DNA of 64,000 nucleotides from Lepidodermella squamata. Lineage: Eukaryota; Animalia; Gastrotricha. The stretch lies in the NCBI GenBank assembly GCA_047495785.1, contig JBLDXI010000018.1:186001-250000 (forward strand), written 5' to 3'. Below, in pieces: positions 980 to 59,270 of the stretch (position 1 is the stretch's first letter; each line of letters opens with the position of its first letter). The position numbers and the translations under genes are program-made. The notes under the pieces were generated by a model. The model was not told the DNA's origin and ran no database searches. It worked only from the letters and a program-made list of their open reading frames with translations.

Positions 980-3900
980 CTCAGAATGTGTGTTGGGACA
1001 GCGATGATTTGCAGCTCTTCATCGTAGTCCAAGTGGTGGCCACTGCCAGCCGATCCGACGGGCACGCCAGGCGAGCCGAAGGACTGCAACCGCTGCCGCT
1101 GCTGAGCAATTTGACCCGCAGATTTCGCATCCCCACCACCGCCGCCGCCGCCGCCGCCGCCACCGGACGCCGGCGGCTTCGAACTCGCGTCATTGGCAGC
1201 CGACCCTAGCTGGGACAGGCCCTCGGCTGACAGCGACCGTTGAGCGCCGATCACGGACGAAACAGCCGCGTTGGCTTGCACTTTGGACGAGGAGTTTTGC
1301 AGCGATACGCTCTGCTGATTCGCGGCCGCGTTCGAGCCCGAGCTCGACTGGCGCCGCTCGGAGCCCGCCGAACCCGAACCGCCGCCGAGTCGCTCGCGAG
1401 AGCCTGCAATTGACATGGCCCGCAACGAATCGCCATCGCCTTCAAAATCTAAAAATTATAACGAAAATTATAATTAAAAGAGAAAAATTCGCATCAGCTA
1501 TATTTAGATAATTATGAGAAACATATTTTGTGATTTTTTGCAAACAAAAGTCAATAAAAAATAGGTCACAAGTTTGTGTAGCAGAGTTCTCAACCTTGGC
1601 ATTTGAGCTCTTTTTCTCTGAAATGAGTGAAACCGGAACTAAAACGATGAAATATTTTCCGTTCTACAAATCCACTGGTTTGAAGCCATAAGCCGATAGA
1701 CTCTTTACACATCGAACTTGAGTAGTGACTGATAATAATGTGATTTTTGCAAGTGAATCGTAAACCATCATTCAATTGATTATTCAATATCATAAATTTC
1801 ATGCAAAGAAAATAATTTACAGAGTGATCCTCAGTGATCGTGATACAGCTTTTACAGTATAATACAGAAACAACTAGGACAAAACGCGCTACTTTTCTCA
1901 CTATTGCGAGGCAGAACTCGCTCCGAGAAGCCAGACGTCAGCTTCAAAATCGTCGTCAACACTGAGCTTTCTGTCATTTCTTCAATAGCAAAACGCATAA
2001 AATAAATTCGCAAATATTGCCAAGAAATTCGAGTATCAAAATGAGTGTGACGGCTTTCCAAGAAAAAACCTATTTGAAACTTATTTGAATTTCCGAATTT
2101 TAAAAAAGCATTTAAATAATTAAATTTCGAGGAATATTACTAACAACGGCAGCAAAATCCTTTTAGGGCAGAAATTATTATTCACCAGGGAAATATTTTA
2201 CTTGCAGCTCGTTATATTTCAGGGGAAAAAGAGCAAATAGCTATAGTTTAGATTGAAATTCACCATGCGATTCAACGCCGCGTGTTGGGTCGCAACAACA
2301 CCTTGAAAGCAGTTTAGAAACGACCGCTCGTGGAAAAAGAACAAAGGAAAAGGTGATCGCGCATTTTATTACGCCTCGAGCCCTTCACTTCATTTACTAC
2401 CGATTCACTATCAGTTGGTAGTAATTTCTTTTATATAATTATAACACGAAAATGGTCGAAGTTCAACTCTGGACGCTGTCAACAGTAGCAAAATCATCGC
2501 GCAAGCAATTTTTCCCTGAAATAAAAAAGGACTGCTAATAAAATATGTTCAACACGAACAAACTATGGCCCATTATGAATGATTCACCCGGGAAAAACTC
2601 CTGGAAATCATGAAAAATATTGTTTCCCAACTTGAAATACCTGAACTTGAGCAGTAGACACTATCGAGTGAGTCATCGTCCGACAAACTATCGCCACTAC
2701 GATTCGACGCGTTAGAAGACGCCCGTCGGTGCAGACTGCCGCCGCTGAAGACGCGCCTCGGCTGGCGGCCTCGCCGACCTCCGGCGACCGGGTGCCGCCT
2801 CGCGCCCCAGAAATACACCGCATTCGACGTTTTCGACCCGGCGACCGAAAATGTCGTCGATGCGCCGATGAAGTTGGCGGGCGCTTTCAGTTTCGAAACA
2901 GCTGTTGGACGCTTTTGTTCGCGCCGGTTGCCGAGCCCGAGTTGAGCGAGTGAGTTCTTGCCGACCGTTATCACTTGACCAGAATCAGATAGCAGAACCG
3001 TCTAAAAATGCGAAAGAAGTATTAGCAAAATTGCACATTTTTGTAAAAATGTTGGATCTTAATAACATATGGCACTTCAAGTGTCTAAACCGCTGTATAT
3101 AAACTTCTAAGACTCGAATTTTATCAACAATTGTCCCAGCAATTTTGAAAATTTACAAATGGCTGTGGTAATATTCGAAATGAAAGTGCCGCCAGCTATC
3201 AGAGTTGTCATCAAGGGTCCAGGCCCAAATAAATAACTACATAATTCAGCGGATACACAATCCGGACTGAGGAGCCAGCGATAGCTAAACGCTGAGTGAA
3301 CACGTGGCTGCCAACCAGTCAACCAACAACAGGTTAATGGGCCCACGACCAGCGCTACAAGTCCTCAGAGATAGTCTTCGGTTCAACGCTTAGCATCAGC
3401 GAATGCGGATTTATTTCGCCAAGGAAACATCGAGTGCCGTCGTTAATACTGCGCACTTTGCCGTAATAGTAAGGAAGAGGATTTGTACAATTTATCGCAT
3501 TTATTGGTAAATGATTTGATGCGAGCTCGTGGTTTACTAACCTCTCGAATTCCCCCGCACTACACCTGCGTTATCATAATTTGAAGTCGGCTTCTAAGCA
3601 AGATCGCGAGACCGTTTAGAATCAGCTAATCGAATTCGTATTAGCAGTTTCTGGTAGCGGCTAAGAGTAGCCGACCACCATGAATCATCTGCCAGATGGG
3701 TTTTAAACGGGCCTTGATCGCGGTTTTGAGACCCATCTATCACCGTCAAGACCACGAGCTAGAAATTATTCAAAATCGCCATATCAATTTCCTGAAAATG
3801 CAAGACAGCCGACAGATTTCTTTTCAAATTCTTGAGGCCAAAAATTAAAAAATTAAAAAAAATTAAAGAATCCTCAAATTGAAATTAATAGCCAGTTTTT

Positions 3901-9753: not shown

Positions 9754-10947
9754 TCAAACTTTAACCAGCCACTGCGGGCGCTTCTTGACGAACTCTGGCT
9801 GCCCGAATTGCATACCAGTTAGTTCATTCACCGAGCGTTGCGACAAAAGCTGGGCACCATCTGGAGGCAGCACACTGTGGCGCTTTCCTTGATACATGAA
9901 GTCGGAGACCGGGCATACGATACATGCAGTACCAGCGCCGAATACTTCGATTACTTGCTTGTCATGGACTAGCTGCAGCAATTCATCCAATGTGATTTCA
10001 CGCTCAACAACGTTGACGTCTGGCCACGAACGAGCGAGATCGATAATTGAATCGCGCGTTACACCGGGCAGAATGAGACCAGAGCTCAGAGGCGGCGTAA
10101 TGAGATCGTACGCTTTGCCTGATTTGCCTTTCGTCACGATAAAAATGTTCATAGTTCCGACTTCTGTAATGTAATGCTCCTTTCCATAAAGCCAAAGCAC
10201 CTGTTGGCAGCCTTGGCTAGCTGCATGCTTCTGTAACGCCAACGTAGGGGCATAATTCGAGCCAATTTTCGCGAAACCAGTACCGCCAGGCCATGCTCGC
10301 ACCATCGAAGGGTCAACGAGGAGGGAAACAGGCTTGAAACCAGATGCGAAGTATGGTCCAACAGGACCACCGATAACGCTGAATATAACTTCCGAACTCG
10401 AGGCGACTCCAAGAGTTGGTTCAGTTCCAATCATGAATGGCCGAATATAGTACGTTGGCGATCGGTTCAAATCTTTCGGGTCACATGGAGGAACCCAGTC
10501 AGATTCCTCCTTGATAAAACGTTTTACAGCGTTAACCCATTCATCGACATCATAAGTCGGCAAACAAGATCGTTCAACACTTTTCAACATTCGTTTAGCA
10601 TTCATGTCCGGGCGAAACAGACGAATTGCTCCATCAACACCACGATAGGCTTTCATACCTTCGAAACATTCCTGAGCATAATGCAAAACTTTAGCTCCCG
10701 GATGAATTTCCAAGTTCTTCAACTGCTTGATCTCAGGTGACTCCCAACCATGGGCACTAGTCCATTTGGCGATCAACATGTGATCAGAAAATGATTTACC
10801 AAAAACAAGTTGTGAAACACTAGGCTTTGCCAAAGGCTTCTTGGTGCGATGAACCTGGATGGCAACGCTTTTGAAAGTGGATTCGCTTGCTTGACATGAC
10901 AGCCGGGTTCCGATAACACTCAACAGTCGGTTCTTGCTTGAAAACAT
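9754..10947 (-). CDS. BCAT: Branched-chain amino acid aminotransferase, copy 1 (intronless, 397 aa)
   Basis: Motifs LHYAQECFEGMKAY, LFRPDMN, PLP lysine in AKIGSNY, ITEVGTMN, ILPGVTR and GAGTACIVCPV (CXXC). First ATG at 10947. The basic N-terminus resembles a mitochondrial presequence. Confidence 0.95.
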   Translation of the reverse strand: MFSSKNRLLSVIGTRLSCQASESTFKSVAIQVHRTKKPLAKPSVSQLVFGKSFSDHMLIAKWTSAHGWESPEIKQLKNLEIHPGAKVLHYAQECFEGMKAYRGVDGAIRLFRPDMNAKRMLKSVERSCLPTYDVDEWVNAVKRFIKEESDWVPPCDPKDLNRSPTYYIRPFMIGTEPTLGVASSSEVIFSVIGGPVGPYFASGFKPVSLLVDPSMVRAWPGGTGFAKIGSNYAPTLALQKHAASQGCQQVLWLYGKEHYITEVGTMNIFIVTKGKSGKAYDLITPPLSSGLILPGVTRDSIIDLARSWPDVNVVEREITLDELLQLVHDKQVIEVFGAGTACIVCPVSDFMYQGKRHSVLPPDGAQLLSQRSVNELTGMQFGQPEFVKKRPQWLVKV

Positions 10948-11714
10948 TGCAGTCTTAAATTGCTGCCAACAAGCTGATAAAATCAATTAATCTAAAACGG
11001 CAGAAGGGCAAGTTAGGACAAGGTTACGGAACTGAAGATGTCAGTTCCTGTTGGCAACAGCACACACGACTCAAGCATGCTAGCAAAAGTTGCATTATTC
11101 ATGGGTTAAGACATGTCCCGCGGGTAAGCCTAGTTGTCTGGGCTGGCCCGAACTCTCTCTAAAGTTTCCTCAGTGGTCCTGGTATGAAAACTAAGCTGGG
11201 GTCGCACCGGAAGCCTTACGGGTGATGATGATGGTAATGAGTTAATTTAGGTTAAAGTCGTAGTTGACGCAAACAGACAATTTTTTAAATACAGAGGTAA
11301 AAAAAGAACAATCGATATCTCAGATCAGTTGTATAACGCGAAGGCTGCAGCTCTTGTGTCAAACCAGTTTTCCAAAGCACAAATATAGCCGCCGTGGGTT
11401 GTCATAGCATCCAAATCGACGTAGGGATAGCAGTAACGAGTAACAAGAGTAAGAGATAGAGTAAGACGTACCGTATGAAAATGGCCCTTATTTAAGCTAC
11501 ATAGTAATCTGATAAAAGGTCGATTGTGATAGTACATTTATTAGTACGTAGTCACCCCAATTGAGTGACCCAAAACAAACCCCACGGTCCCTGCTCATAC
11601 GGCGCGTCTCATATGCGGCAATAAAAAGTCTAGGACGACAAAAAACGGCGAGGGCTCTTCGACACGTCTTCCGCCACAGAAAAATGTCTACTTCAATCAC
11701 ACAATCGCATAATA

Positions 11715-12660: not shown

Positions 12661-13854
12661 TTAAACTTTAACCAGCCACTGCGGGCGCTTCTTGACGAAC
12701 TCTGGCTGCCCGAATTGCATACCAGTTAGTTCATTCACCGAGCGTTGCGACAAAAGCTGGGCACCATCTGGAGGCAGCACACTGTGGCGCTTTCCTTGAT
12801 ACATGAAGTCGGAGACCGGGCATACGATGCATGCAGTACCAGCGCCGAATACTTCGATTACTTGCTTGTCATGGACTAGCTGCAGCAATTCATCCAATGT
12901 GATTTCACGCTCAACAACGTTGACGTCTGGCCACGAACGAGCGAGATCGATAATTGAATCGCGCGTTACACCGGGCAGAATGAGACCAGAGCTCAGAGGC
13001 GGCGTAATGAGATCGTACGCTTTGCCTGATTTGCCTTTCGTCACGATAAAAATGTTCATAGTTCCGACTTCTGTAATGTAATGCTCCTTTCCAAAAAGCC
13101 AAAGCACCTGTTGGCAACCCTGGCTGGCTGCACGCTTCTGTAACGCCAACGTAGGGGCGTAGTTCGAGCCAATTTTCGCGTAACCCGTACCGCCAGGCCA
13201 TGCTCGTACCATCGAAGGGTCAACGAGCAGGGAAACTGGTTTGAAACCAGATGCGTAGTAAGGCCCAACAGGGCCACCAATGACACTGAATATAACTTCC
13301 GAGCTCGAGCCAATTCCAAGAGCTGCTTCAGTTGCAATCATGAATGGCCGAATATAGTACGTTGGCGATCGGTTCAAATCTTTCGGGTCACATGGAGGAA
13401 CCCAGTCAGATTCCTCCTTGATAAAACGTTTTACAGCGTTAACCCATTCATCCGTATCAAAAGTTGGCAAACAAATACGATCTACAGTTTTCAACATTCG
13501 TTTAGCATTCATGTCCGGGCGAAACAGACGAATGGCTCCATCAACACCTCGGTAGGCTTTCATACCTTCGAAACATTCCTGAGCATAATGCAACACTTTA
13601 GCTCCCGGATGAAGTTCAAAGTTCTTCAACTGCTTGATCTCAGGCGCCTCCCAACCATGGGCACTAGTCCATTTGGCGATCAACATGTGATCAGAAAATG
13701 TTTTGCCAAAAACAAGTTGTGAAACATTAGGCTTTGTCGATGGCTTCTTGGTGCGATGAATCTGGATGGCACTGCTTTTAAACGTGGATTCCTTCGCTTG
13801 GCATGACAGCCGGGTTCCGATAACACTCAACAGACGGTTTTTACATGAAAACAT
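12661..13854 (-). CDS. BCAT: Branched-chain amino acid aminotransferase, copy 2 (intronless, 397 aa)
   Basis: Same length and motifs as copy 1. The C-terminal ~140 aa are identical. Confidence 0.95.
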   Translation of the reverse strand: MFSCKNRLLSVIGTRLSCQAKESTFKSSAIQIHRTKKPSTKPNVSQLVFGKTFSDHMLIAKWTSAHGWEAPEIKQLKNFELHPGAKVLHYAQECFEGMKAYRGVDGAIRLFRPDMNAKRMLKTVDRICLPTFDTDEWVNAVKRFIKEESDWVPPCDPKDLNRSPTYYIRPFMIATEAALGIGSSSEVIFSVIGGPVGPYYASGFKPVSLLVDPSMVRAWPGGTGYAKIGSNYAPTLALQKRAASQGCQQVLWLFGKEHYITEVGTMNIFIVTKGKSGKAYDLITPPLSSGLILPGVTRDSIIDLARSWPDVNVVEREITLDELLQLVHDKQVIEVFGAGTACIVCPVSDFMYQGKRHSVLPPDGAQLLSQRSVNELTGMQFGQPEFVKKRPQWLVKV

Positions 13855-14767
13855 TGCAATATTACTGTGCTTACAAGAAGCTAATAAAATCAATGCAATT
13901 TAAATGAAAGGCCAGCTGGGCAAAATTAGGTCAAAGCTTAGAAGTCGTGATTACTCAGTGGCAAAAATGGGCGATTGCCGGATGAAAGCTGATTCAAAAG
14001 TGTTGAAACCTTAAGCTAAACAAATCACCAGGCGTTAAAAAGTTTCACTTGACATTTGGCATCATCAAGTCACCTGTACACACGAGAAACGATGGTGTGG
14101 CAACCGCTCACTGAACTTCAAACTTCAAAGAACTGCTGGCACGCGTTCGCAGAACGACCTGCGAAAGCTTGGTTGGAAACAGAAAAAAACATTTTCGTAA
14201 ATTTTGTATTTTTATGAGTTATAACATGCACGCAAACCTAAAGAACGAATTTTGTATTTTCTTCCCTTTATTATTGTCAATATTTAATGAAAAAGTGCGC
14301 GAACGAAACTGTGTGTGGCCAGTTTCCTTTCTCGGCTTGAGAGCTCTATCTTAACCTTCCTCAATAATGGTGGTTACTGTGGTCTCGGTAAAAAAAAACT
14401 TTGATGGCACAGAATGCCCCACGGCGATCCCATAATTAGGCTCTGAGCTTCAACGATTCAGCCACGAGGAGGTATTGGTGTCATTTTGGTGGAGATTGAT
14501 GATAGGTGATTTCCTAGCCTGCTTATTTCGGATGAAGTGCTCATTACACATTATTAATTTCATATTTCCTTACATTTATGGTTCAAGATCGGTGATAATA
14601 TCCCGATGTGTTTGTAATTAAATTGTCAGGTTTATGTTGCTTAGGTTTGTGTTGAGGCCGCGCTTCTCTCATATTTGAAGAACCACTCGCTATTATATGA
14701 CCTTGATTTCATGTCATTTCATAGACTCCTTTACTGCTACTTTGATCTTGCGTTTGAAGCCTCCGCC

Positions 14768-46835: not shown

Positions 46836-49358
46836 TCATTCCACCGTCGAAGAAGAAGCCGAGATTGAAATGGAGACGTCAGAAAAGCTCGGACTCAGAA
46901 ATGATGGTTCATCATTCTCGAGTTTGACAGCCACAACGGGGTTCGTCAGTTCGTCATCCGTTGAGCTAGAGTGGCTACTCAGAAAAATAACCGACGACGC
47001 AACATCCGATTCCGAATCGGTCGACGTTGAGCTACTCGATTCAGATCGGTCCGACGAAGAATCTCTGAAATCGGGTCCATGACCGTCCGAAATCGCTGGA
47101 ATAGTAGAATTTCCGAATTTGCCAGAGTCAATAAATCCGGTTTCAGAAACAGTTTCGGGTTTTTCCGGGGGGCTAGAAAATCCAGGTTCGGCTTCTATTG
47201 TCATTCCGGATTCCGGAATAGTAGGCGCTACCTGGTGAAACCCGATATCGGATTTTTGACATATCTCGGTCAATTCAGGTCCAACATTGATCAAGGACTC
47301 GATATTTCTAGCAAATCCATTGATACCATTTTTAGGGAATTTCTGGGTATCAGGTTCGGCAACCGGTTTGTATTTCCCGGGTTCTGAAAGGCTCTGCGAG
47401 AGTAGTTTAGGAACAAAACCATTTTTCCCGTTTTCGGCAGTTTCGGCTTTTTCGGGTATTACCGAGTCCGAGTCATTGTCAGTTAGTGTTGATTCAGACG
47501 ACGAAGCGTCGAACACGTGTTTTGGCTCTCGGTCCTGCTTGCATTCCGCCGATTTGCACATGCACGGCTGTTCGATGGGCAGCCCGCCGAAATAGTCGAA
47601 CGTCAACTCTTCGTGCGCGGCGATGTTCCGGCTGGCGAAAAAGGCAATGCGCGGCAGTTCTGGATGCACGCAGTCGACAAAAACAGCCTGCGGCACGAGG
47701 TTAGCATCTCCGCACCGCGAGTTGATGAAACGCGCGATGTTGCCGTACTGGTAGGCGTTGATGACGTAGGCAGGGCACTGCTCGATGTTGAAGTCTATGT
47801 CGAACAGGTAACGCTTAGCTACATTTTTCTCCAACTTGAGGCTCGATTTTTTCGAAATCACTTCACCTAAAAATAGGTTAAAAATAGTTTTACAATATTT
47901 CGGCAATTTAAAAAATGAAATTTTTACAGAAATTGTATCAAGTCAAACTTTCGAACTTTTGCTGTTGAATTGAGTTGAAAAGTCAGCTCTCAGTTTATTT
48001 TATCATCAACACAAATGTAATGCTTCTCAGCGATGGAACGAGTTCTCCTTGCTCGAAACATTTGAGAAGGTTCTGCCTGGTCGAAAAAGTCACCAGCGCT
48101 AGCTTTCAAGAAGCAGCTAAGGTTTAGGACGAAACTGAGCGTTATGCTGACTCGCCTATCTTACAATGGATCACTGGAAATCGCTCGGATCTGGAGATTC
48201 GTGGTACTCACGAACGGTCACAATGTTGTAAAAACGAAATTCAAATAAATTCAAAAACGAAAATTGAATTTTGATTATAAGATTGATGACTGATTCCAGG
48301 TTTAACAATTCACTTACCGACATATTCCACCACAAATCGCCCCTTCTTGATCGGCCGCAGTGTTTTGACGCCCCAACCTCTGTCCCGAGTTTTGAACAGC
48401 AACAAAGGCACCGAAAGACCGTGCTGAACCACGCGGTTCGTGCAGTAGTAGTCGCACTCGCATAACGACGTGCATTCGTAGATAACTTGAGGATGCGGCA
48501 CCTTCTTCAGCGTGCCGTATCGCCTCGAGTGGTAGGCGAACGTGACTTGGCCCAGTTTCGGACAACAGTCAGACCGCTCCGAGCAGTAGCCGCCCTTCTC
48601 GCTGGAACACAGGCACTTCGTCACGGGTTCAGTGACGCATGACGCTGGCACGTCGTCCGAGTACAGGCAGTTTTTGATGTAGTGAAAACGCGCGGGTAAC
48701 AGATCATCGTCGACAGTGTTCTCGCAGGCTATAGTGAAGCGGACTGATGGGTCGGCGGATCCGGCAGATTCGATGCGTTCGATCTCACGCGCAAACTGGG
48801 CCCGTAGAAAGGCTGGTTTATCCGCGAATTCGCTCGGCAATCCGACTGGAAATTTCAGCGAAGGAGGAGGGAATAGTAGGTCAGGGTTCAACAGCTTTGC
48901 TGAAAACAAGAAAATTCGAAATAAACTGATAATGAGACAAGAAATGTGGGCAGAATTCATTGATACCCCACATTTTTTAGTTGGTAAAATATTCGAAAAC
49001 GACCCTGAATTGCATATTATATTATCGCATATTCACCTAATTCCGAGTTAATATCTTCAATGCCGATGTCAAGCAAATCGAAGACCTGTTGCATCCTGAC
49101 GACGAAATCCGCCCATTTCAAGGTCATGGTCAAGAATTTTGCTGACTCTTCGATTTCTTCACAACTCGGTTGCTTCTTTACGGACTCAACATCGACCGAG
49201 TCCAGCTTGTATTTTCTGCCCAGCTCAGATTTTTCACTCATTTTCTCTTCAAGCTCGTCAGGGTTAGTCAGCCAAGTGTAAACATCCGCGTAACGAGAGC
49301 CCAAGCCTTCTAAGATCGCTCGGGTCGCTTCGACTTTGTTGATTGGAATTTGACTCAT
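46836..49358 (-). CDS. SUV39/G9a-type pre-SET/SET/post-SET protein, paralogue A (~644 aa)
   Basis: Exons 49358-49037, 48899-48318, 47866-46836. Cys-rich pre-SET (IYECTSLCEC...CTNRVVQHG), RGWGVKT, FVVEYVGE, GNIARFIN, EELTFDY and post-SET CMCKSAEC. Confidence 0.85.
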
Positions 49359-50032: not shown

Positions 50033-53000
50033 TCAAATATGTAAAATGTCGGATTCGGACGATGATGAAATCACAACAACATCGGCTTGATCGGTTGAAT
50101 GCAGCTGCTTTTCCGGACTGGGCAGTTCTAAATCTTCTCCGTCATCGCTGTCCAAAATTATAGTTTTACTCGGCCGCGGCTCGGCGAAGCCGCTGTCATC
50201 CATATTTCTAGACAATTTCCGTTTCGCTTTGCCACTGCTGTGCTGGCTGCGCATTGAAAAATAATCACTCGTTGTCGATTCTCCGATTGAAATCGTCGAT
50301 TTCAGGTTCGTATTCGAGCGAGGCCGTTTCGGCGTCGATGCGATCGAGATGGGTTCGGCCATTCTGCAGTAGGACGAGCCGCACTGACACACTTGGCCGC
50401 TTGTCCTCAGCCCTTCGAAATAGTCGAAGGTCAACTCTTCAGAAGCGGCGATGTTACGACGGGCGAAAAACGCTATTCGAGGTAGCTGAATTGAAGAAAA
50501 AAAGAGAATTATTGATTTATTCAAAAAATTCAATCAAGAGCAAAGTTTCGAGTTTCGCTTACATTAGAATCAACACAATCGACGAAAACAGCTTGAGTGA
50601 TGAGGTTCGCATCGACACACCGCGAATTGATGAAACGAGCCAGGTTGCCGTACCTACGGGCGTCGATTAGAAACTGCGCCTTTCGCTCTTCGTTGTAGTC
50701 CAGTGCAAATGTGAAACAATTTGAAGGTTTAATCGCTGTCGGATCGCTGATTTCCAACACCTCGCCTAAAAAAATTCACAAAATATCTCATTCGCATTTT
50801 AAAATAAAATGTATCATATGCGCCAGAAAAATGTGGGCGCAATTTTGCGAATTTAGTCAACATTTTATTTCTAGTCAATTTCCTATTTCTAGCACACAAA
50901 TGGGTGATGCGCTAGAAGCTTCCATCTTCTGAAAGCCAGTTGATCAGGTCTCCACCGCGGCCCATCAAAACTGCAGCGGCTACAATTTCTGACTAACTAA
51001 ACTCAGCGCCTCAACTTCACAGCATTCAAGTACGCCAGCCCCAACTTCCACCAGTAAAATACGGGCGAAAAGGATTCACTTTTATTGACTCAATGCCGAA
51101 GACTCAATGCCAGCTTGACTCGAGTCCAAAAGTTGGCTCAAAATATACTAGTCGCTTTCAGATCTACTTTCACTTTCATTTATTTACACTCTGAATTTTA
51201 GGGTCTCATTGCTGCTCGCTTTTCATCGCTCTCAATTCCCATGATGAATCGCATGCCACCGGTCATCCACCGTATTATGCTCGATTCGCGAATTGCGGCG
51301 AAAAAGGCCATGTACAGGCAAATTTTGAATTTCGGATTAATAACCTCGCTGTATACATGGTGGACCAGTTTGTCAGCTTCGTCAACTCAGCCATGTTTTT
51401 CGGTAAATCGGTTGGTCGTCTGGCATTAGCCGAGGTTGTGAAAAAGCATCTGTCGCGACAGGTTTTCACCGCAAAAAATTCAGAAAAACGATTCCGTGAG
51501 ACAGATACTACAGAAGGAGAATAGCTTGGGCGCTTTACTAACACAAGTCAGAAACCTTTCGATATCGCTTGCAAGAGTTTACAGAGGCTGTGATGAGGCA
51601 GCACTGATCATGAAAGGAATGAAAGTGAACTATTTTCTATTCGTACCCGTGTGCGTGAAGATGCGTGAAAGTGCCGCCAGATAACTTTCCACGTGCGAAA
51701 TTTCCAAACAGCTTAATGTCGATCTCTACGATGAATTCTGCGAAGAGGCCCTGGAGGACGAACTACAAAATTCCGTGTTCTCAGCAATTTCTGACCTGGA
51801 AATTTTCCGTTGTGAAGCTAGAAAGCTTGAGTTGCCTCTGGCAAGATAATCATCCACCTTAATGGCTTGCAACTACGTGCGCTATCAAAATGCCTCCATT
51901 TTTCAACCAGATAAACATCGACCAGACTGTCAAGCTAGATTGACCTCGCTGCCCAGAGTAATAGTATGCCGATTTCATCAATGTTATTATCACCATTCGC
52001 GTTACTCTCTTCAACTCTCTATTCTCGTTATTGATTAATTTTCGTCGCATGGCCTAGCGTCGTGACCAATATTATATTATTCGAATTGTGCTAGGTTGTT
52101 CTTATTTTGGGTTTAATAAAAGTAACGTTTGATTAATTCGCGTCGTTCGCTACACAGCAGCACAATAGCGATGCCTGGTTATAGGAATCTGGGCCAAACC
52201 CCAGAATGCTGGAAAAATCAGCAACTGACGCGTCTAATTTCCCAACGCAATCAGCAAGTGTTACTCACAGTGCTACGATCGCTCCCAATCTAAATTAAAA
52301 CTGCTTTCATCTCATTTCCACGTCACTTCAAACTTTTAAATTCGAAGAAATCTATAGGTAGCTCATAGCTTCAAGTTGATTAGATTCATAGTTTTACATT
52401 TAAAAAAATTTAATCATGATTTCTCATAATTTTGTCGCAAAATTTTTGAAAATTTACCGCAAAATTCGATGACAAATTCGCCTTTCCGAATAGGCGCGAG
52501 AGTTCGAAGTCCCCAGCCGCGATTCCACGTCTTCTCGAGCAGCAGCGGCACTTGCAGCCCGTTTTGAACCACCCGGTTCGGACACGTACTCAAACACCGG
52601 CACAGCGCCGTGCATTCGTAAATAGCCTGCGTTCTATCGACGTCTCGCAACGTACCCAACTGGCAAGTCGAGTAAGGAAAATCCGCGATCCCAGCCATTT
52701 TCGGGCAGCATTTCGCCGAGTTTTCATTGCATAGCCCGCGGCACTGGCAGCCAACAACCGGTTCCAGCGCCGCTTTCGGCACTTTCTCGCCGTATCGATT
52801 CGATTTTATGTACGTGAAATCGTTGGGTAGAACTTCTTGGTCGAATCGATTTTCGCATGCAACAATTACACCCTCGATTTGTTGAATTTGACGTGCGAAA
52901 CAAGCGCGTTTAAATGCGGGCTGGTTGACGATAGACCGAGGTAGGCTGCTTCGATTCGGCACTGGGATGCGAAATTTCGGAAAATCGAGCACTTTACTGA

Positions 53001-53444
53001 GCAGCGGCTCGTCTTCGCCGAAAATTCTCCGCTGGGGGTCGAAAATTCGAACGCGGGATGCGAAGTATTCCCACGTTAACAAGTCGGCTATTCGACGAGC
53101 TGATTTCTCCAATATTTCGATGCTTGGAATCTGAATAAATTAAAAAAAATAGCTCGTCATTTTTAATCGAATCCTGCTGCCAAGTTCTCAATTTCAGCTC
53201 AATCCTCGATTGGCAAATGCCCCGAATCCCCGAATGGTACCTGATTTGCAGTGATATTACTGGCAGAGAAAGACAGCGAGCTCAAATGCGAAGAATCGTT
53301 GCGTTTGTTGAAACTGGCGAGAAAGACGTCACATTTCGGGCCGAGTCGCTGCAGCACGGCGAGCACCATCTCGAACACGCCCTGTTTGTCGGTTTCTAGC
53401 AACGGCTGCGGCGGCTCGACTTGGGCGGCCCGGTAGTTCAACAT
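50033..53444 (-). CDS. SUV39/G9a-type pre-SET/SET/post-SET protein, paralogue B (~510 aa)
   Basis: Exons 53444-53241, 53130-52458, 50765-50563, 50485-50033. Motifs IYECTALCRC...CPNRVVQNG, RGWGLRT, GNLARFIN, EELTFDY and CQCGSSYC. Confidence 0.85.
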
Positions 53445-53724
53445 CGTTGCGAAAATAAAAATATGGTAAATTAACCTAATTAAATTACAAAATTTGAAGG
53501 TGTGAAAATAGAATTCCGATAGATCAATACAAATCGATATGGTTGTGGTGACCCGGCGAAAACAATCCGGCGTGATAGATTAAAAATTTACACGAAAATG
53601 CAGTGGCGGTAATCGATAATGAGCGCAACACGCCTTCAAAGAACCATCTTGCTAACAAAATAAGAGCCGGTACACTCGATCAAAGTTTATATTCCAAGAA
53701 AAATAACGGTTTTCACCAACGAAA

Positions 53725-56366
53725 ATGGAGAGTGAAGCTCAATGGAAGGAGGTTATCGAATTCAGCAAACAAATCCACGCAATTGCCGAAAATGCCCTCA
53801 ACACGTAAATTATCCCCAAAACTATTTCATGCTATTTTATAATTTTTCGCTAATAGAAAATACGAAAATTCCGAGGAAATGCGGCCTCATTTGAAATCGG
53901 CCGAGATTTTTCTCGCGAATTTCAAATTATTGCTGAGTAAGAAAAATGAATGGACTGTGGCGAGAAAGAAGGCGGTTCAAACGGCGATGCAGCGCGTCAA
54001 ATTCACGGCTGAAATGGTCGACGGAATGAGAAAAGAAATCGAAAAAGACCGCGAACAGGTAAGGAAAAATTCAAATTTTTCACACCAATTTTTCTGAAAT
54101 TCTGAATTTTTCCCCAGATTAAAAAATTGGCCGAAGAAGCGCAGCAAGTTGCCGAAGGAATAAGCAAAGAAAAGGAAGAGGTGATCGCAATAAACCAAAA
54201 ACTTGCCGAGGAAGAGGCTGAAGAAAACGAGGTAACGGCCGCTTCTCGAAAACTGAAGGAAGAATGCGAACGCGAACTGGCCGACGTCATGCCGGCCATT
54301 GAGAAAGCCCTCCAATCACTCGATTTGATAAAACCGAAAGAAATCGCCGAAATTAAATCTATGAAAAATCCACCAGCAGTCATCAAATTCGGTAAATTAT
54401 CGCCCCATTGCCTAAACTTGATGTTTCATAATTTTCAATAATTTTCAGTTATCGCTGCGATTTGCGTGATGCTGGAGGTGGAACCTGAAGTGGCTAAAAC
54501 GCCCCAGCCACTCGTTGACCTGTACTGGAAGCCGTCTCAAAAAATGTTGGGAGATGTCAATTTCATGCGAAGACTTCGCGACTACGATAAGGACAATATT
54601 CCCGACAAAGTTCGAATTTTATACAAGTTTGGCCAATTTTAATTGATTTTTCAAAGGTCATGGAAATTTTACGAGCTGAGTTTTATGGGAAACCAGAATT
54701 CGAGCCAAGTCGAGTCGCTAGAGCTAGCCAAGCTGCAGAAAGTTTATGCAAATGGGTCGTTGCCATGGAAAAATACGATAAAGTCTCAAAGGAGATTCTA
54801 AAACCGAAGAAAGAAGCGCTATTAAAGGCTCAAGAACAACTCGGCCAGACTCTTCAAAGCATGAATACAAACCGGTCAAAACTGACAGTTCGCGAGCAAA
54901 AAGTGTTCGATCTGGAGACGAAGCTGAAAAAAGTCGAGGAGAAGAAAAAAGGCTTCGAGGATCAAATGGAGCAGAAAGACCGGGCCTTAGCCCGCGCTAA
55001 AGAGCTGATCGACGGTCTGACGGGTGAATCTGAGAAATGGTCACAAACTCTCGACGAATGCCGGTCAAGTTATGCAACTATGGTCGGCGATGCAATTCTT
55101 AGCTCGGCCTCGATTGTCTACCTCGGGCCATTGCCGCTAGAAAGCCGAGACGAAGTCATAAAATCCTGGGCTGAACTGATTGATACCTCAAAGGAGAAGA
55201 CGAAATGTTCTGAACCTTCGAAATTTTCACTGCATAAATTCGTGAATGATGGCTTGACCCTGGAATACTGGCGTGAGGCTGACTACCCTCAAGACCTGCT
55301 TTGGCTCGATAACGCGACAATTGTCACTCAGTTAGCCCAGCGACAGCCTTTCCCGTTATGTGTCGACCCTCTAGGGGCTGTGAATAAGTGGATAAAATAC
55401 TTGGAAAAGGACAACAGTCTTTCGGTTGCGAAACCAGGTGATGAAACAATGCTGGAAACGTTGAAGGAATGCTTGAAAAACGGCAAGCCAATGCTGTTGG
55501 AAGACGTCAATGAGCCGCTAGATGCTCAGCTGGACAATCTTTTGACGCGAAAAAGTGGAAAATCAACAGGTGCGACATTATAATTCACACTTTTTAAGAT
55601 TTCTCATAAAAAAATGTTACTTGATTTTACAGAAGGGAACGGTAATTTAAAAGCTTTGATACTAGCCTTTCTCTACTGAAATTTTCAGCTTAATCTGTAG
55701 CTTGACTCTAAATTTCTTTTCATTACATTTTCCTTAATTTCTTCTCAGCTGCTGAAACTTGCAAAATTGGCGAAGAAGAGATCAAGGTTCATAAGGATTT
55801 TCGGTTTTACATGACGAGCCGGTTGCGTTGTGTCAAGCCGTTTCACTTCTACAAACCCGACGAAGAAGCTGAGCGAGAGGCGAATTTCGCCTTGGTCAAT
55901 TATGTTCCACCCAACCCTGAAAGCGCCGCCCTCGAGCATGCTCTGTTATCCGGCGTTGTCTCAAAGGAAAAGTAAGATTGATAACTCAATTTAATTTCTT
56001 GGAAATATTTGCAAAAAATTTAGGAAAAAATTGGAGGCTGAAAGACTGGCTACGATAGCCAAATTATCTCTCCATCGGTCGAAAATCATCAAAATTGGCG
56101 ATAAGGTGTTGGAAGTGCTTTCAAACCCGGCCGCCGGCCGCTTGATTTCAATCGAGATGACACTGGCTGTTTTGGAGGCGAAAAAGCCGCTCGTAGAAAT
56201 GCAAGAACAGGCGGCCGAGGACGAAGAGGCGATGAAGAAAATCGACTCGAGTTTGGACCCGTTCCGAAAACTGACCAACAAACTGGCGAAGAAAATTTGC
56301 ACTTACGATGACGATGACAGTTTGAAGCCATTCGATCTGGACGCTTTCATCAAAAAAGCTCTGTAA
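53725..56366 (+). CDS. Stand-alone truncated axonemal dynein heavy-chain-like protein (AAA4 lid, stalk/MTBD, AAA5, strut; ~734 aa)
   Basis: Exons 53725-53804, 53857-54058, 54118-54391, 54449-54609, 54657-55569, (55633-55641), 55749-55971, 56024-56366, with no stop or frameshift. Motifs EIAEIKSMKNPP, YWKPSQKMLGD..F...L.DYDKDNIP, ASQAAESLCKWV, LIDGLTGE..KW, PLCVDP, GKPMLLEDV.E.LD and DFRFYMTS. Confidence 0.82.
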
Positions 56367-56544
56367 AATCTACGATAGACAACAAAATGACATGCAGTTA
56401 ACTGCCAATACGTTTAATCAAAGTGTAAATAAGAATGCCATTGGTCGATTGAGCAATAATATGTAAGAAAACAATCACGAGTATAATCAGATTAGGTCAA
56501 TAAAAAATCATCAAAAAATGTCAGATTTCTTTGGGCACAACAAG

Positions 56545-58050
56545 TTACAATTTGGTGACTAGAAGTTCGCCAAAACTTTCAGATTGTTCCAGGGCAATAG
56601 CACCGGTTTTTACGCCGAACAGCAACGCGAGAAAAACGTCAGCAGCTTGAGATTTCGTAGTAGATTCATCGGGGCAGAATTCAGAAAATTGGCACATTGA
56701 ATTCGCATCACTAGTCGCTAGCCATAATTTAAACGAAGCAACCGGCGTTTCACCGCTTGAAAAATCGTAACTAGGCGGAGGCATGACCGGACTCATCGGC
56801 ATCTCCATCATTGGAATTTGCGGTTCTTCAAACGCAGCCGTGCTGTGGCCGCCTATTTCTGACGCAGTTTTACTTCGATCTTTTCGCTCGTTATTCGTCG
56901 GCAGATTCGTGGAAACTCGTAATGAACTGTTCGATCGAACTGAACGGCCTCGAGGCTCTTCAACAGTCTCATCGTTCGGCAAAGTTGTATGATTGACAAA
57001 GGTCATTTCATCGTCAACAATCATCGGCTGGTCGTTCAAGTCAACATTGCGACGGGCGAAGAAAGCCTCGATGAGATCAGCGTGAATTTCCAACGCATTC
57101 GACGGGAAATTTCGTTTCACAGTAAATTTGTGAGCGGTAAAACGATTTTCAGCCTCAAATGGACGAATAGGCGGCTTTGGGAGTTGGGAAAAACTCGCCA
57201 AATTATCAACAATAACAGCTCGTTTGACTGGGCCACGACGGCGAACAGTTCGCTTCTGTTCCTGTTCCTCTTCAACTTCAACAACAGGGGGCTGGTTCTC
57301 CTTTTCAGGCTCTTCCGGCATGAAAACAGGCGGATTTTCGTCCAATATCTGGCCGTATTGAGACGCAAAGGCTTCAGAGTCAGCCGGGACCCCTCGGTCA
57401 AACACCTGGTGATCGACATCCATCGCCGGCTGAGGTATAATCCCAAGCATTTCAAACGGGTCCATCGGGTCCATTCCGCCAAGATCAATTGGTTCATTCA
57501 AAGGGTTGTGCTGTGGTTCAGGCGGCGTCACAGGGCGATGCGTTTGATGAGATTCGAAGTCAGAAGTCATTTCGAAGTTGGGCGGGATTTGAAGATCCAT
57601 CATAAAAGGCGTGTTAATGTGCTGGAATAACAGAATGTCGGCTTCATTCGTTTGAGTAACTTCGATAACAGCTTCTTCGTCAATATTAGCCGTGGTGGTT
57701 GATTTCCCCCCTGCTGGACGCGATTGGCGGTGAAAAACCACGCTAACCATGGCTGAATTGACATCGTCAAGCAGGTAACAGTGCTGCTGAGAAAACACCT
57801 TCACCACGCCGTACATCAGTTGAGCAGATAAATAGAGTGAGAACTTGACGATGTCTTCTTGACTCGTGGTCAACTTCGGCCGACCCTTTGAAAAGCCAGA
57901 AACTTTGATGTGTTCGACGAGGAAATGGCACTGCTGAGGAATGTTAACGGAAATATAGTCTCGCTTCTTAAGCCCGGCTGGACGCGTTGCAGCAATCCAT
58001 ATCGTGCCAAATTTACCGCGCTTGGTGAGCAAATTTTTCTCGAAAAACAT
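56545..58050 (-). CDS. REC8: Meiotic kleisin REC8 (Rad21/Rec8 family), intronless, 501 aa
   Basis: MFF..NLL..RGKFGTIWIAAT, FSLYLSAQLMYGVVKVFSQQ (REC8-type) and the C-terminal winged helix KSQAADVF..LL...EQSESFGEL. Confidence 0.88.
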   Translation of the reverse strand: MFFEKNLLTKRGKFGTIWIAATRPAGLKKRDYISVNIPQQCHFLVEHIKVSGFSKGRPKLTTSQEDIVKFSLYLSAQLMYGVVKVFSQQHCYLLDDVNSAMVSVVFHRQSRPAGGKSTTTANIDEEAVIEVTQTNEADILLFQHINTPFMMDLQIPPNFEMTSDFESHQTHRPVTPPEPQHNPLNEPIDLGGMDPMDPFEMLGIIPQPAMDVDHQVFDRGVPADSEAFASQYGQILDENPPVFMPEEPEKENQPPVVEVEEEQEQKRTVRRRGPVKRAVIVDNLASFSQLPKPPIRPFEAENRFTAHKFTVKRNFPSNALEIHADLIEAFFARRNVDLNDQPMIVDDEMTFVNHTTLPNDETVEEPRGRSVRSNSSLRVSTNLPTNNERKDRSKTASEIGGHSTAAFEEPQIPMMEMPMSPVMPPPSYDFSSGETPVASFKLWLATSDANSMCQFSEFCPDESTTKSQAADVFLALLFGVKTGAIALEQSESFGELLVTKL

Positions 58051-59270
58051 TCTAAAACAAAGCAATATAGTTCAATACAGCAATGAAATAAGTATAACCA
58101 GGTACCAGGCTAAAATAGGATTGAACTACAACTTGAACAATTTTAAATTGATAGGTGCGCAGACAAAGAGAGATGCATACTAGTCGCATATTTAGTTCAT
58201 TAAACTGACGCATTTTCAGTTGGCGCATCAACAACGAACGTTTTTTACTATCTCCAATCCTGCCTCTAATTATGTTGCATCGAATCCTATTACCCATTTT
58301 TACCAATCTTGCGCCAATGATTTCAAAATAAGTAGGTGTCGAGCAGCATTCTTGAACAAGGAAAAACAATCGAGAATGGTTGATGGTTGGAACACAGTTC
58401 GAATGCGACTTGAGCACTGACTAAGCAGCCCAATTTCCCTCTACTTAAACTGTACTGATCATCGAGATTAAACAACTACAAAAATCTACTTCACTTCATT
58501 TGTCCCAACTACTCATCAGTTCTCCGAAAACCGCCGGAAATTAGAAAATTGCAAAAAAGCGCGGCAAATTCGATTTTTTGCACGTTTGTCCTAGACATAA
58601 ATTTTATATTGACTATTGCATAGTATTTTATTACTAAAAATAATGTACATAAGATGTTGCACAGTTAGATTTACATTAGAAAAATAGTGGGTTAGAAGCG
58701 TCTCTGGATCTATTTTCGACGGGTTCGCTCATGATCTTACCCAAAAGTCAGATCCGGAGTCGTGAATCGTGAAAGGTTCTTAGGCCATCTAAGATCTGAG
58801 AACTGTTGTTTTAGCTCCAGCCTTTCCCCCTTTCCACTTACGGCCTGCGGATTTTACACGTTACACCTTTCGTTTTTTGTTTTTTTTGCGCCATGCGCTA
58901 CATAGCTTTTTTCAATTTCGTTCACCATGAGGTCAGTATTGAAGAGCTTCTAGTTTGCAGCAACAGTCACCACATTGGCTTTTGTAGAAGCAAGTGCTAA
59001 AATATTTTCATCGCGCACTTTTGCAAATATCGAAAATAGCATTTTCTGGCAATGTATATTGCGGGTAACTTCGCCTGTCGAAAGTCGGAGGATGAAGGAT
59101 GATGTACAACTTACAACTTTCATCATAACTACTTAATTAAGTTTAAACCTAGTTCCTAGTTTTGTTCAATTCGCTCTTATCCTTGTGCGTATTATTATGA
59201 TCAATGTTTTTATATGTTAGTTAATTGTGAATCCACATTTGGCATGCAGGTTGGATGCCATATTAGTCAT

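What the first reader, a model, noticed from the sequence alone, without database searches (positions are those of the whole stretch)
53725..56366. Intact motor-less 'mini-dynein': stalk and microtubule-binding domain as a stand-alone gene
Seen: a ~734-aa ORF over 7-8 canonical exons, covering only the end of AAA4, the stalk coiled coils with the MTBD, AAA5 and the strut. It has its own ATG (in-frame TAA upstream at 53704) and its own stop. It is boxed in by a divergent SET gene 280 bp upstream and convergent REC8 ~180 bp downstream, so tail, linker, AAA1-3 and AAA6 cannot lie adjacent. Known: dynein heavy chains are ~4000+ aa and need AAA1 for motility. The MTBD motifs resemble single-headed inner-arm axonemal dyneins. 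Inference: strong divergence without any disabling mutation suggests a selected, ATP-independent microtubule tether or brake, or one piece of a split dynein.
Basis: partly seen in the sequence, partly recalled or inferred. Interest (0 to 1): 0.8.

Follow-up and report, generated by a model that had tools for sequence, protein, structure and literature searches.

The report
Stand-alone motor-less dynein stalk gene
This small animal has an expressed, conserved gene that keeps only the microtubule-gripping arm of a cilia motor protein (dynein) and none of its engine, so it probably binds microtubules without using ATP; I found no report of such a gene.

Summary
Window 53725-56366 (+) carries a 7-exon, 731-codon open frame. 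It matches only the last helices of dynein AAA4, stalk coil CC1, the microtubule-binding domain (MTBD), CC2, the AAA5 large domain and the strut. It has no P-loop, and no other dynein sequence lies anywhere in the 64 kb.

- **Neighbours:** a divergent Pre-SET/SET gene 280 bp upstream and a convergent Rad21/Rec8 gene 178 bp downstream.
- **Expression:** contigs of a cDNA-type run show all six introns removed. There is no cover in the upstream spacer. One 5' end lies about 60 nt before the ATG.
- **Orthologue:** a second, well-diverged species (three metagenome contigs) has the same gene between the same neighbours, with the same first and last residues. Protein identity is 62.5% while synonymous sites are saturated, and there are only two single-codon indels.
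- **Pattern of conservation:** highest in the MTBD (72-86%), lowest in AAA5 (51-58%).
- **Shared oddity:** both orthologues carry a one-residue insertion at the MTBD-CC2 junction, where 26 full-length dyneins have none.
- **Closest relatives:** DNAH12/3/7 inner-arm dyneins.

Stand-alone status, expression and selection are supported. The ATP-independent tether or brake function is inference. A split dynein is unlikely but not excluded. The scan has also noted another motor-less stalk gene, an SLC44 fusion, elsewhere in this genome. I did not build or search the joined protein.

The parts
53664..53724 (+). 5' untranslated region. One cDNA 5' end maps at about 53664-53665. An in-frame TAA lies at 53704-53706.
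   Evidence: a loose end of an X1 contig reads, reverse-complemented, GTACATGGGGG followed by window 53665-53683. From my memory, GTACATGGG is the 3' end of the SMART template-switch oligo. X1 depth is 0 in bin 53482-53678. The TAA is read.
53725..53804 (+). Exon 1: ATG and 26 codons, a remnant of an AAA4-lid helix.
   Evidence: Intron 1 joint 53804>53857 in X1. 73% identical to the orthologue, which starts with the same MESEAQW.
53857..54058 (+). Exon 2: the last AAA4-lid helix (a degenerate form of the NYVTPTSYLELI motif) and the start of stalk coil CC1.
   Evidence: Alignment to six full-length dyneins. Loose ends at 54058 and 54115 show intron 2 removed.
54118..54391 (+). Exon 3: CC1 (54118-54312) and the start of the MTBD with the KSMKNPP motif (54313-54391).
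   Evidence: Pfam PF12777. No indel against the orthologue. A loose end at 54448 shows intron 3 removed.
54449..54609 (+). Exon 4: MTBD core with a shortened 'flap' segment and the LGD..F...L..YDKDNI motif.
   Evidence: 72% identical to the orthologue. Intron 4 joint 54609>54657 in X1.
54657..55569 (+). Exon 5: end of the MTBD (54657-54791), CC2 (54792-55031) and the first part of the AAA5 large domain (55032-55569).
   Evidence: Pfam PF12777 at 2e-18 and PF12781 at 7e-21. PDB DNAH12 residues 2697-2990, E 5e-63. AlphaFold of the orthologous piece has pLDDT 82.8 and all top fold matches are dynein heavy chains.
54789..54803 (+). One-residue insertion at the MTBD-CC2 junction, just before the conserved CC2 proline (..YDKVSKEILKPK.. 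against ..YDRVAK-VVAPK..).
   Evidence: both orthologues have it. None of 26 full-length dyneins (those longer than 3800 aa among the hits) has any indel from MTBD helix H6 to the start of AAA5. Also seen in the HMMER alignment.
55749..55971 (+). Exon 6: second, strongly diverged part of the AAA5 large domain.
   Evidence: Pfam PF12781 positions 103-162, E 2e-4. Intron 5 joint (cut +3 = 55569>55749) in X1. In the orthologue, exons 5 and 6 are one continuous reading frame.
56024..56366 (+). Exon 7: strut (buttress) coiled-coil hairpin and one following helix. Stop at 56364-56366.
   Evidence: Weak co-linear matches to DNAH7 3126-3205 and to P0002 3081-3164. 63% identical to the orthologue with no indel, and the same end, FIKKAL-stop. 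Intron 6 joint 55971>56024 in X1 and X3.
53199..53444 (-). First coding exon of the divergent Pre-SET/SET neighbour (the gene continues to about 52414).
   Evidence: X1 joint 53130/53241 (CT..AC = GT..AG on the minus strand) and a contig ending at 53444.
56545..58065 (-). Convergent Rad21/Rec8 neighbour.
   Evidence: Pfam PF04825 at 9e-20. The orthologous gene lies in the same place in L002 and L003.

Best explanation
This is a real, transcribed, stand-alone gene that arose from part of a single-headed inner-arm dynein heavy chain of the DNAH3/7/12 type and has been kept by selection since before two well-diverged species split. Its 731-residue product keeps one structural unit of dynein: the last AAA4-lid helices, the antiparallel stalk (CC1/CC2) with the MTBD at its tip, the AAA5 large domain, and the strut that braces the stalk. 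It has no tail, no linker, no AAA1-4 P-loops and no AAA6, so it cannot hydrolyse ATP or make a power stroke. Shown: gene structure, splicing, one 5' end, its own stop codon, conserved gene order, purifying selection, strongest conservation in the MTBD, unchanged coil lengths, and a dynein-like fold for CC2+AAA5. Inferred: the protein binds microtubules through the MTBD without nucleotide control and works as a static tether, spacer or brake about 15 nm long. The diverged AAA5/AAA4-remnant/strut 'foot' would be its attachment or regulatory end. The conserved one-residue insertion at the MTBD-CC2 junction may fix the coil registry, and so the affinity state, which the ATPase ring sets in motors.
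For: Gene model and domains. No P-loop. No other dynein sequence in the 64 kb. Expression and splicing of all six introns, no cover in the upstream spacer, and a 5' end at about 53664. The orthologue has the same start, the same stop and the same SET and Rec8 neighbours on three independent contigs. Over 725 aligned codons, identity is 62.5%, dN is 0.31, pS is 0.89 (saturated), and there are only two 1-codon indels. The few polymorphisms shown inside the coding sequence are all synonymous, four of four (55196, 55409 and 55831, read; L001 9649). Conservation by part is MTBD 72-86%, CC2 71%, CC1 and strut 63%, AAA5 51-58%. The junction insertion is absent from 26 full-length dyneins. Origin in the DNAH12/3/7 group rests on two separate regions. 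The AlphaFold model of CC2+AAA5 of the orthologue has pLDDT 82.8, and all of the 50 best fold matches listed are dynein heavy chains or axonemal repeats that contain them.
Against: No binding, localisation or phenotype data exist, so the function is inferred from sequence alone. The RNA evidence comes from assembled contigs of one run that is not on record as RNA (X1), plus one spliced contig of X3. Levels, tissue and the 3' end are unknown, and the 5' end rests on a single contig. AAA5 and the strut are still conserved at 51-63%, so they do something, and that could be contact with other dynein parts. I could not search the rest of the genome for complementary dynein pieces. I did not fold the whole chain.
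Confidence: 0.6

Rival explanations
1. It is the middle piece of a split dynein heavy chain. Separate genes would supply tail-AAA4 and the rest of AAA5-AAA6, and the three polypeptides would assemble without covalent joining into a working motor, as Ustilago Dyn1 and Dyn2 do in two pieces.
For: Split heavy chains exist. In Ustilaginomycotina the split lies within AAA4, just before the stalk, close to where this protein begins (PMC5100056; PMC4540427). AAA5 and the strut are still under selection.
Against: The known split pieces reach the natural C-terminus. This one stops inside the AAA5 lid, so a three-way split would be needed. The conserved AAA4-lid motif that joins the stalk is degenerate. 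AAA5 keeps only about 96 bits of the PF12781 score (E5 plus E6), against 259 for an ordinary dynein fragment, while the stalk score is largely kept. A one-residue insertion sits in the length-invariant stalk junction. The best identity to any full-length dynein representative is 38%. No partner piece lies in this 64 kb.
Confidence: 0.1
2. It is a regulator of true dyneins rather than a free tether. It would compete with inner-arm dyneins for their microtubule sites, or its AAA5/strut foot would dock onto a dynein or the axoneme to damp sliding (a dominant-negative brake).
For: It comes from the inner-arm group and keeps part of that group's MTBD flap segment. The MTBD is the best-conserved part. 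The organism has axonemal dyneins, according to other unchecked notes of this scan.
Against: No evidence places it in cilia or sperm. This reading overlaps the main explanation and differs only in partner and location.
Confidence: 0.2
3. It is a transcribed relic: a fragment of a duplicated dynein gene that is decaying and has no function.
For: It is truncated at both ends and more diverged than ordinary dyneins.
Against: The frame is open over 731 and 733 codons in two species whose synonymous sites are saturated. Start and stop are the same, there are only two 1-codon indels, conservation is graded by domain, and introns were gained and lost without damage. A random sequence of this length would carry about 34 stop codons (731 x 3/64, my arithmetic).
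Confidence: 0.03
4. It is an assembly or annotation artefact: the exons belong to a larger dynein gene, or the locus is misjoined.
For: None found.
Against: X2 DNA contigs cover 52709-54296 and 54447-56961, with two alternative contigs over 54267-54476. Three contigs of another species show the same SET / gene / Rec8 order. No RNA joint leaves the locus. Both species have an in-frame stop upstream of the ATG.
Confidence: 0.02

Closest known systems
Single-headed inner-arm axonemal dynein heavy chains DNAH12, DNAH3 and DNAH7 (IAD-3 group)
   Same: These are the best sequence matches for the CC2+AAA5 exon (DNAH12, E 5e-63) and, separately, for the CC1+MTBD piece (DNAH12, E 1e-39, then DNAH3). 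The gene is co-linear with them through stalk, MTBD, AAA5 large domain and strut. CC1 has no indel against five of six aligned full-length dyneins, and CC2 differs only by the one-residue junction insertion. Part of the flap segment between the MTBD helices is kept.
   Different: About 2,480 N-terminal residues (tail, linker, AAA1-4) and about 790 C-terminal residues (rest of the AAA5 lid, AAA6, C-terminal domain) are absent, counted on a 3994-aa dynein. There is no P-loop. Identity to full-length representatives is only 30-38%. There is a one-residue insertion at the MTBD-CC2 junction.
Split cytoplasmic dynein heavy chain of Ustilaginomycotina (Ustilago maydis Dyn1/Dyn2)
   Same: It is a separately transcribed and translated gene that begins within AAA4, just before the stalk (PMC5100056, PMC4540427).
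   Different: Dyn2 runs on through AAA5, AAA6 and the C-terminus and stays a conserved part of one motor. This protein ends after the strut, comes from an axonemal dynein, and its ring-facing parts are degenerate. No partner genes are known.
Split, trans-spliced outer-arm dynein genes of Giardia and Spironucleus
   Same: Dynein heavy-chain pieces are encoded at separate loci (PMC5100056).
   Different: Most of those pieces are joined at the RNA level into one message; the N-terminal DHC4 part is translated on its own and then assembles into the complex. Here the message has its own 5' end, ATG and a conserved stop, and no joint leaves the locus.
Non-motile full-length heavy chains (DNAHX of sea urchin sperm; DNHD1)
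   Same: They are dynein heavy-chain relatives that have given up motor activity (PMC11785096).
   Different: They keep the full-length architecture with all six AAA modules, and insertions in DNAHX disrupt microtubule binding. Here it is the reverse: the ring is gone and the microtubule-binding part is the best-conserved.
Engineered stalk-MTBD constructs used in structural work (for example the PDB 6rza chimera of the dynein-1 stalk with the DNAH7 MTBD)
   Same: They show that a stalk plus MTBD can fold and bind microtubules without the ring. 6rza is among the matches. That the fixed coil registry sets the affinity is my own knowledge of that literature.
   Different: They are artificial, short and held in register by a foreign fusion partner. 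This is a natural gene with the full-length stalk, AAA5 and strut.
SLC44/CTL membrane protein carrying a dynein stalk and MTBD in the same genome (scan note s1-421951)
   Same: It is another motor-less use of the dynein stalk and MTBD in this animal, according to an unchecked note.
   Different: It is a fusion to a membrane transporter-like protein at another locus. I could not see its sequence, so I do not know whether the two are related.

Membership tests
Dynein heavy chain (motor) | Ring of six AAA+ modules (AAA1-AAA6) | tested here: not met
   Only PF12781 (AAA5) is found, and only in part. There are no matches to AAA1-4, AAA6 or lid families in any exon and none elsewhere in the window.
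Dynein heavy chain (motor) | Catalytic P-loop (Walker A) in AAA1 | tested here: not met
   No GxxxxGK[ST] in any of the seven exon translations.
Dynein heavy chain (motor) | N-terminal tail and linker | tested here: not met
   The protein starts at a position equal to about residue 2490 of a 3994-aa dynein. An in-frame stop lies upstream of the ATG and the 5' end is at about 53664.
Dynein heavy chain (motor) | Antiparallel coiled-coil stalk with MTBD (PF12777) | tested here: met
   PF12777 in E3 and E5. Co-linear alignment with canonical motifs KSMKNPP, YDKDNI and LCKWV.AME.YD.
Dynein heavy chain (motor) | AAA5 large domain and strut bracing the stalk | tested here: met
   PF12781 in E5 and E6. 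The model of the orthologue's CC2+AAA5 matches dynein structures at probability 1.00. E7 aligns weakly to the DNAH7 strut, 3126-3205.
Inner-arm dynein group IAD-3 (DNAH3/7/12), by descent | Closest similarity to this group rather than to other dynein classes | tested here: inconclusive
   DNAH12, DNAH3 and DNAH7 rank first for two separate regions. I built no tree with labelled classes, and the branch is long.
Split dynein (Ustilago type) | Complementary genes that together encode one complete heavy chain | not testable with these tools
   Only this 64-kb window of the genome can be read, and it holds no partner piece.
Split dynein (Ustilago type) | The C-terminal piece runs through AAA6 to the natural C-terminus | tested here: not met
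   A conserved stop follows the helix after the strut in both species.
Trans-spliced dynein pieces (Giardia type) | Pieces joined at RNA level, without their own complete reading frame | tested here: not met
   It has its own ATG and stop, conserved in two species. No RNA joint leaves the locus.

The most novel reading that the evidence does not exclude
The dynein stalk-MTBD-AAA5-strut unit has become an autonomous microtubule-binding protein. Its affinity would be fixed by the coil registry itself (the conserved one-residue CC2 insertion) rather than by an ATPase ring. Together with the SLC44-stalk fusion noted elsewhere in this genome, it would show that this animal lineage has reused the dynein arm more than once as a motor-less microtubule-gripping module, a kind of microtubule-associated protein I found described nowhere.
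Probability: 0.4. Interest if true: 0.8.

Novelty: new variant of a known kind. Interest (0 to 1): 0.68.

Why it matters
Dynein's stalk, MTBD and strut are the parts that carry the signal between the ATPase ring and the microtubule, and until now they have been studied alone only as engineered fragments. A natural, selected protein made of exactly this unit would be a ready-made test of two questions. First, what can the stalk and strut do without the ring? Second, which coil registry is the resting state, and does a single extra residue at the junction lock the affinity? It would also add a new way of making a microtubule-associated protein, by cutting a module out of a motor. This is the reverse of the known non-motile dyneins, which keep the ring. 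If it works in cilia or sperm, it could be a new kind of passive element in axonemal beating.

Tried and rejected
**Wider family search.**
- An exhaustive HMMER search of 1.84 billion representatives with exon 5 gave one orthologue cluster (P0001, 59%). The next hit was an ordinary 3994-aa dynein at 38%.
- Word-indexed searches with exon 5 and with a profile of the last exon found only that same second species.
- A JGI metagenome scan with the last-exon profile found nothing, and neither did a degenerate DNA pattern for the junction peptide.
- The ESM Atlas look-up returned only ordinary dynein fragments.

**Short database hits as possible other 'mini-dyneins'.** The 43 hits under 1000 aa carry only dynein domains, with strong canonical AAA5 scores. 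They look like fragments of normal genes.

**dN/dS.** Synonymous sites are saturated (pS 0.89), so no ratio can be given, only dN = 0.31. The three contigs of the second species are 99.7-99.9% alike. L001 and L002 differ at one coding site, which is synonymous; I did not map the L003 differences.

**Scan notes by sequence.** Blank.

**Bacterial promoter/terminator scan of the 3' spacer.** Not applicable to this organism, so I ignore it.

**Literature.** Six searches found split, trans-spliced and non-motile full-length dyneins, but no natural stand-alone stalk gene. The library does not cover most subscription journals.

**Organism.** Run and organism names are coded, and I did not identify the species.

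**Left out under the operators' rule.** I did not save, search or fold the joined seven-exon protein. In one search the exon translations were laid as separate fragments on an alignment of full-length dyneins and printed on one display line. There the exon-1 fragment was misplaced by the aligner, so I disregard that part of the display.
Full report
**What is there**

The + strand between 53725 and 56366 holds seven exons: 53725-53804, 53857-54058, 54118-54391, 54449-54609, 54657-55569, 55749-55971 and 56024-56366. All six introns are GT..AG. Five are 47-59 nt long and one is 179 nt. The coding sequence is 2196 nt, which is 731 codons plus a stop. An in-frame TAA lies 21 nt before the ATG.

I searched the exons one by one by reference. 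They match only two Pfam families:
- PF12777, the dynein stalk with its microtubule-binding domain (MTBD), in exons 3 and 5.
- PF12781, dynein AAA5, in exons 5 and 6.

No exon has a Walker A motif. The exon translations are co-linear with residues ~2490-3205 of a 3994-aa full-length dynein. In order, they cover:
- the last two helices of the AAA4 lid;
- stalk coil CC1;
- the MTBD;
- stalk coil CC2;
- the AAA5 large domain;
- the strut hairpin and one further helix.

tblastn with five full-length dyneins against all 64 kb hits nothing outside 54112-56246.

On the minus strand, a Pre-SET/SET gene starts 280 bp upstream. A Rad21/Rec8 gene ends 178 bp downstream.

**Is it expressed, and as what?**

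Three public runs hold this DNA. I laid them on 52300-58200.
- **X2** behaves as genomic DNA. Its contigs run through the introns.
- **X1** is not on record as RNA but behaves as cDNA.
  - It has GT..AG joints at introns 1, 4, 5 and 6.
  - Loose ends at 54058, 54115 and 54448 carry the sequence of the adjoining exon, so introns 2 and 3 are removed too.
  - It has the minus-strand intron of the SET gene.
  - It has no cover in the spacer bin 53482-53678.
  - It has loose ends that I recognise, from memory, as the SMART cDNA primer.
- **X3** has one contig spliced at intron 6.

One X1 loose end, reverse-complemented, reads GTACATGGGGG followed by window 53665-53683. I read this as the template-switch oligo joined to a 5' end at about 53664-53665, 60 nt before the ATG. 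This rests on a single contig.

No listed joint connects the locus to anything else. These are contigs, so they say nothing about level, tissue or the 3' end.

**Is it conserved?**

The exhaustive search of 1.84 billion representative proteins gave one close hit, P0001 (59%). After that came ordinary dyneins at 38% or less. P0001 lies on an ENA metagenome scaffold (L001). The last-exon profile found two more contigs (L002, L003). The three contigs are 99.7-99.9% identical, so they are one species.

In that species the gene has 733 codons in four exons (L001 9048-9127, 9190-9894, 9958-11031, 11096-11438).
- It starts with the same MESEAQW after an in-frame stop.
- It ends with the same FIKKAL-stop.
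- It sits between a Pre-SET/SET gene and a Rad21/Rec8 gene, in the same orientations.
- Only introns 1 and 6 are shared. Intron 6 is GC-AG in the orthologue. Four window introns are absent there, and one new intron is present.

I counted codons exon by exon and then pooled them.
- 725 aligned codons are 62.5% identical.
- pN is 0.25, giving dN of 0.31.
- pS is 0.89, which means synonymous sites are saturated, so no ratio can be stated.
- Only two one-codon indels exist, one in the MTBD flap segment and one in AAA5.

Identity differs by part:

| Part | Identity between the two orthologues |
|---|---|
| MTBD | 72-86% |
| CC2 | 71% |
| CC1 | 63% |
| Strut | 63% |
| AAA5 | 51-58% |

The neighbours are no better conserved. 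The SET domain is about 50% identical and Rec8 is 42-71% in its alignable ends. The four coding polymorphisms I could place are all synonymous (read). An unselected sequence would not keep 731 codons open at this divergence.

**Where does it come from?**

Two separate regions were searched against PDB sequences.
- Exon 5 (CC2+AAA5): DNAH12 ranks first (216 bits), then DNAH7 (190) and DNAH3 (174). DNAH1 (158), DNAH6 (130) and the two-headed dyneins follow.
- The orthologue's CC1+MTBD piece: DNAH12 (140 bits) and DNAH3 (134) rank first.

The MTBD keeps part of the extra segment that these dyneins carry between helices; one aligned dynein (P0015) lacks it. I did not build a labelled tree, so 'derived from the DNAH3/7/12 group' is a ranking, not a phylogeny.

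**What has changed**

The canonical AAA4-lid motif that leads into the stalk is degenerate. AAA5 scores about 96 bits on PF12781, summed over exons 5 and 6, against 259 for an ordinary dynein fragment. The stalk family score is largely kept.

Both orthologues also have one extra residue just before the conserved CC2 proline. In 26 full-length dyneins, the stretch from MTBD helix H6 to AAA5 has no indel at all.

An AlphaFold model of the orthologue's CC2+AAA5 piece has mean pLDDT 82.8. It shows a 100-residue helix followed by an alpha/beta domain. Confidence is low only in the diverged segment equivalent to exon 6. All of its 50 best listed structural matches are dynein heavy chains or axonemal repeats that contain them.

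**How it most likely works**

Shown: the gene is a stand-alone product, it lacks any ATPase site, the coil lengths are intact, and selection is strongest on the MTBD.

Inferred: the protein binds microtubules through the MTBD without nucleotide control. It would hold something about 15 nm away through its AAA5/strut/AAA4-remnant foot, acting as a static tether, spacer or brake. The junction insertion may set the coil registry that a motor's ring normally switches. This last point is speculation that a binding assay can test.

**Rivals**

- **A three-way split dynein** is the main one. Split heavy chains are known, and the Ustilago split lies close to this protein's start (PMC5100056, PMC4540427). 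But those pieces run to the natural C-terminus. Here the ring-facing parts are the most degenerate, and the junction insertion sits where 26 full-length dyneins have none. I could not search the genome for partner pieces.
- **An RNA-level joining as in Giardia** does not fit a message with its own 5' end and conserved stop.
- **A decaying relic or a misassembly** is contradicted by the orthologue and by independent DNA contigs.

**Novelty**

The paper searches found the following:
- split heavy chains;
- trans-spliced heavy chains;
- non-motile full-length heavy chains (DNAHX, PMC11785096);
- no natural stand-alone stalk-MTBD-AAA5-strut gene.

The library is incomplete, so absence of a report is not proof. 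Another note of this scan (s1-421951, unchecked by me) describes an SLC44-type membrane protein carrying a dynein stalk and MTBD elsewhere in this genome. I could not compare the two.

**Limits**

- The species is not identified, because run and organism names are coded.
- Only one other species has the gene in the databases I could search.
- The RNA evidence is contig-level.

Noticed in passing
window 47250-48500, 50360-50720 and 52414-53444 (minus strand): There appear to be three Pre-SET/SET paralogues in tandem upstream of the gene. The second species' single SET gene matches all three at 44-55%.
   Followed up: partly
L001 9128-9189, 9895-9957, 11032-11095 against window introns: Introns have turned over heavily between the two orthologues. 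Only 2 of the window's 6 intron positions are shared, the orthologue has one intron of its own, and the shared last intron is GC-AG there but GT-AG here.
   Followed up: yes
window 55570-55748: Intron 5 is 179 nt, about three times the length of the other five, and is absent from the orthologue. I did not examine its content.
   Followed up: no
window 54267-54476: DNA run X2 has two alternative contigs here. One equals the window. The other has 14 differences and several 1-2-nt deletions inside intron 3. Elsewhere X2 differs from the window by about 2-3%. This suggests two haplotypes or strains.
   Followed up: no
window 9754-10986 and 12661-13893 (minus strand): Two open frames of identical length (410 aa) lie 2.9 kb apart. 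The first is a class IV aminotransferase (PF01063). They are probably a tandem duplicate, but I did not test the second.
   Followed up: partly
window 55155-57931, run X1: Many 'opposite strands' joints and primer-bearing loose ends in X1 look like fold-back artefacts of the cDNA library or its assembly. I did not use them as evidence.
   Followed up: no
window 53445-53663: Only about 220 bp separate the end of the SET contig at 53444 (the first base of the SET ATG) from the 5' end of this gene at about 53664. This looks like a compact shared divergent promoter.
   Followed up: no
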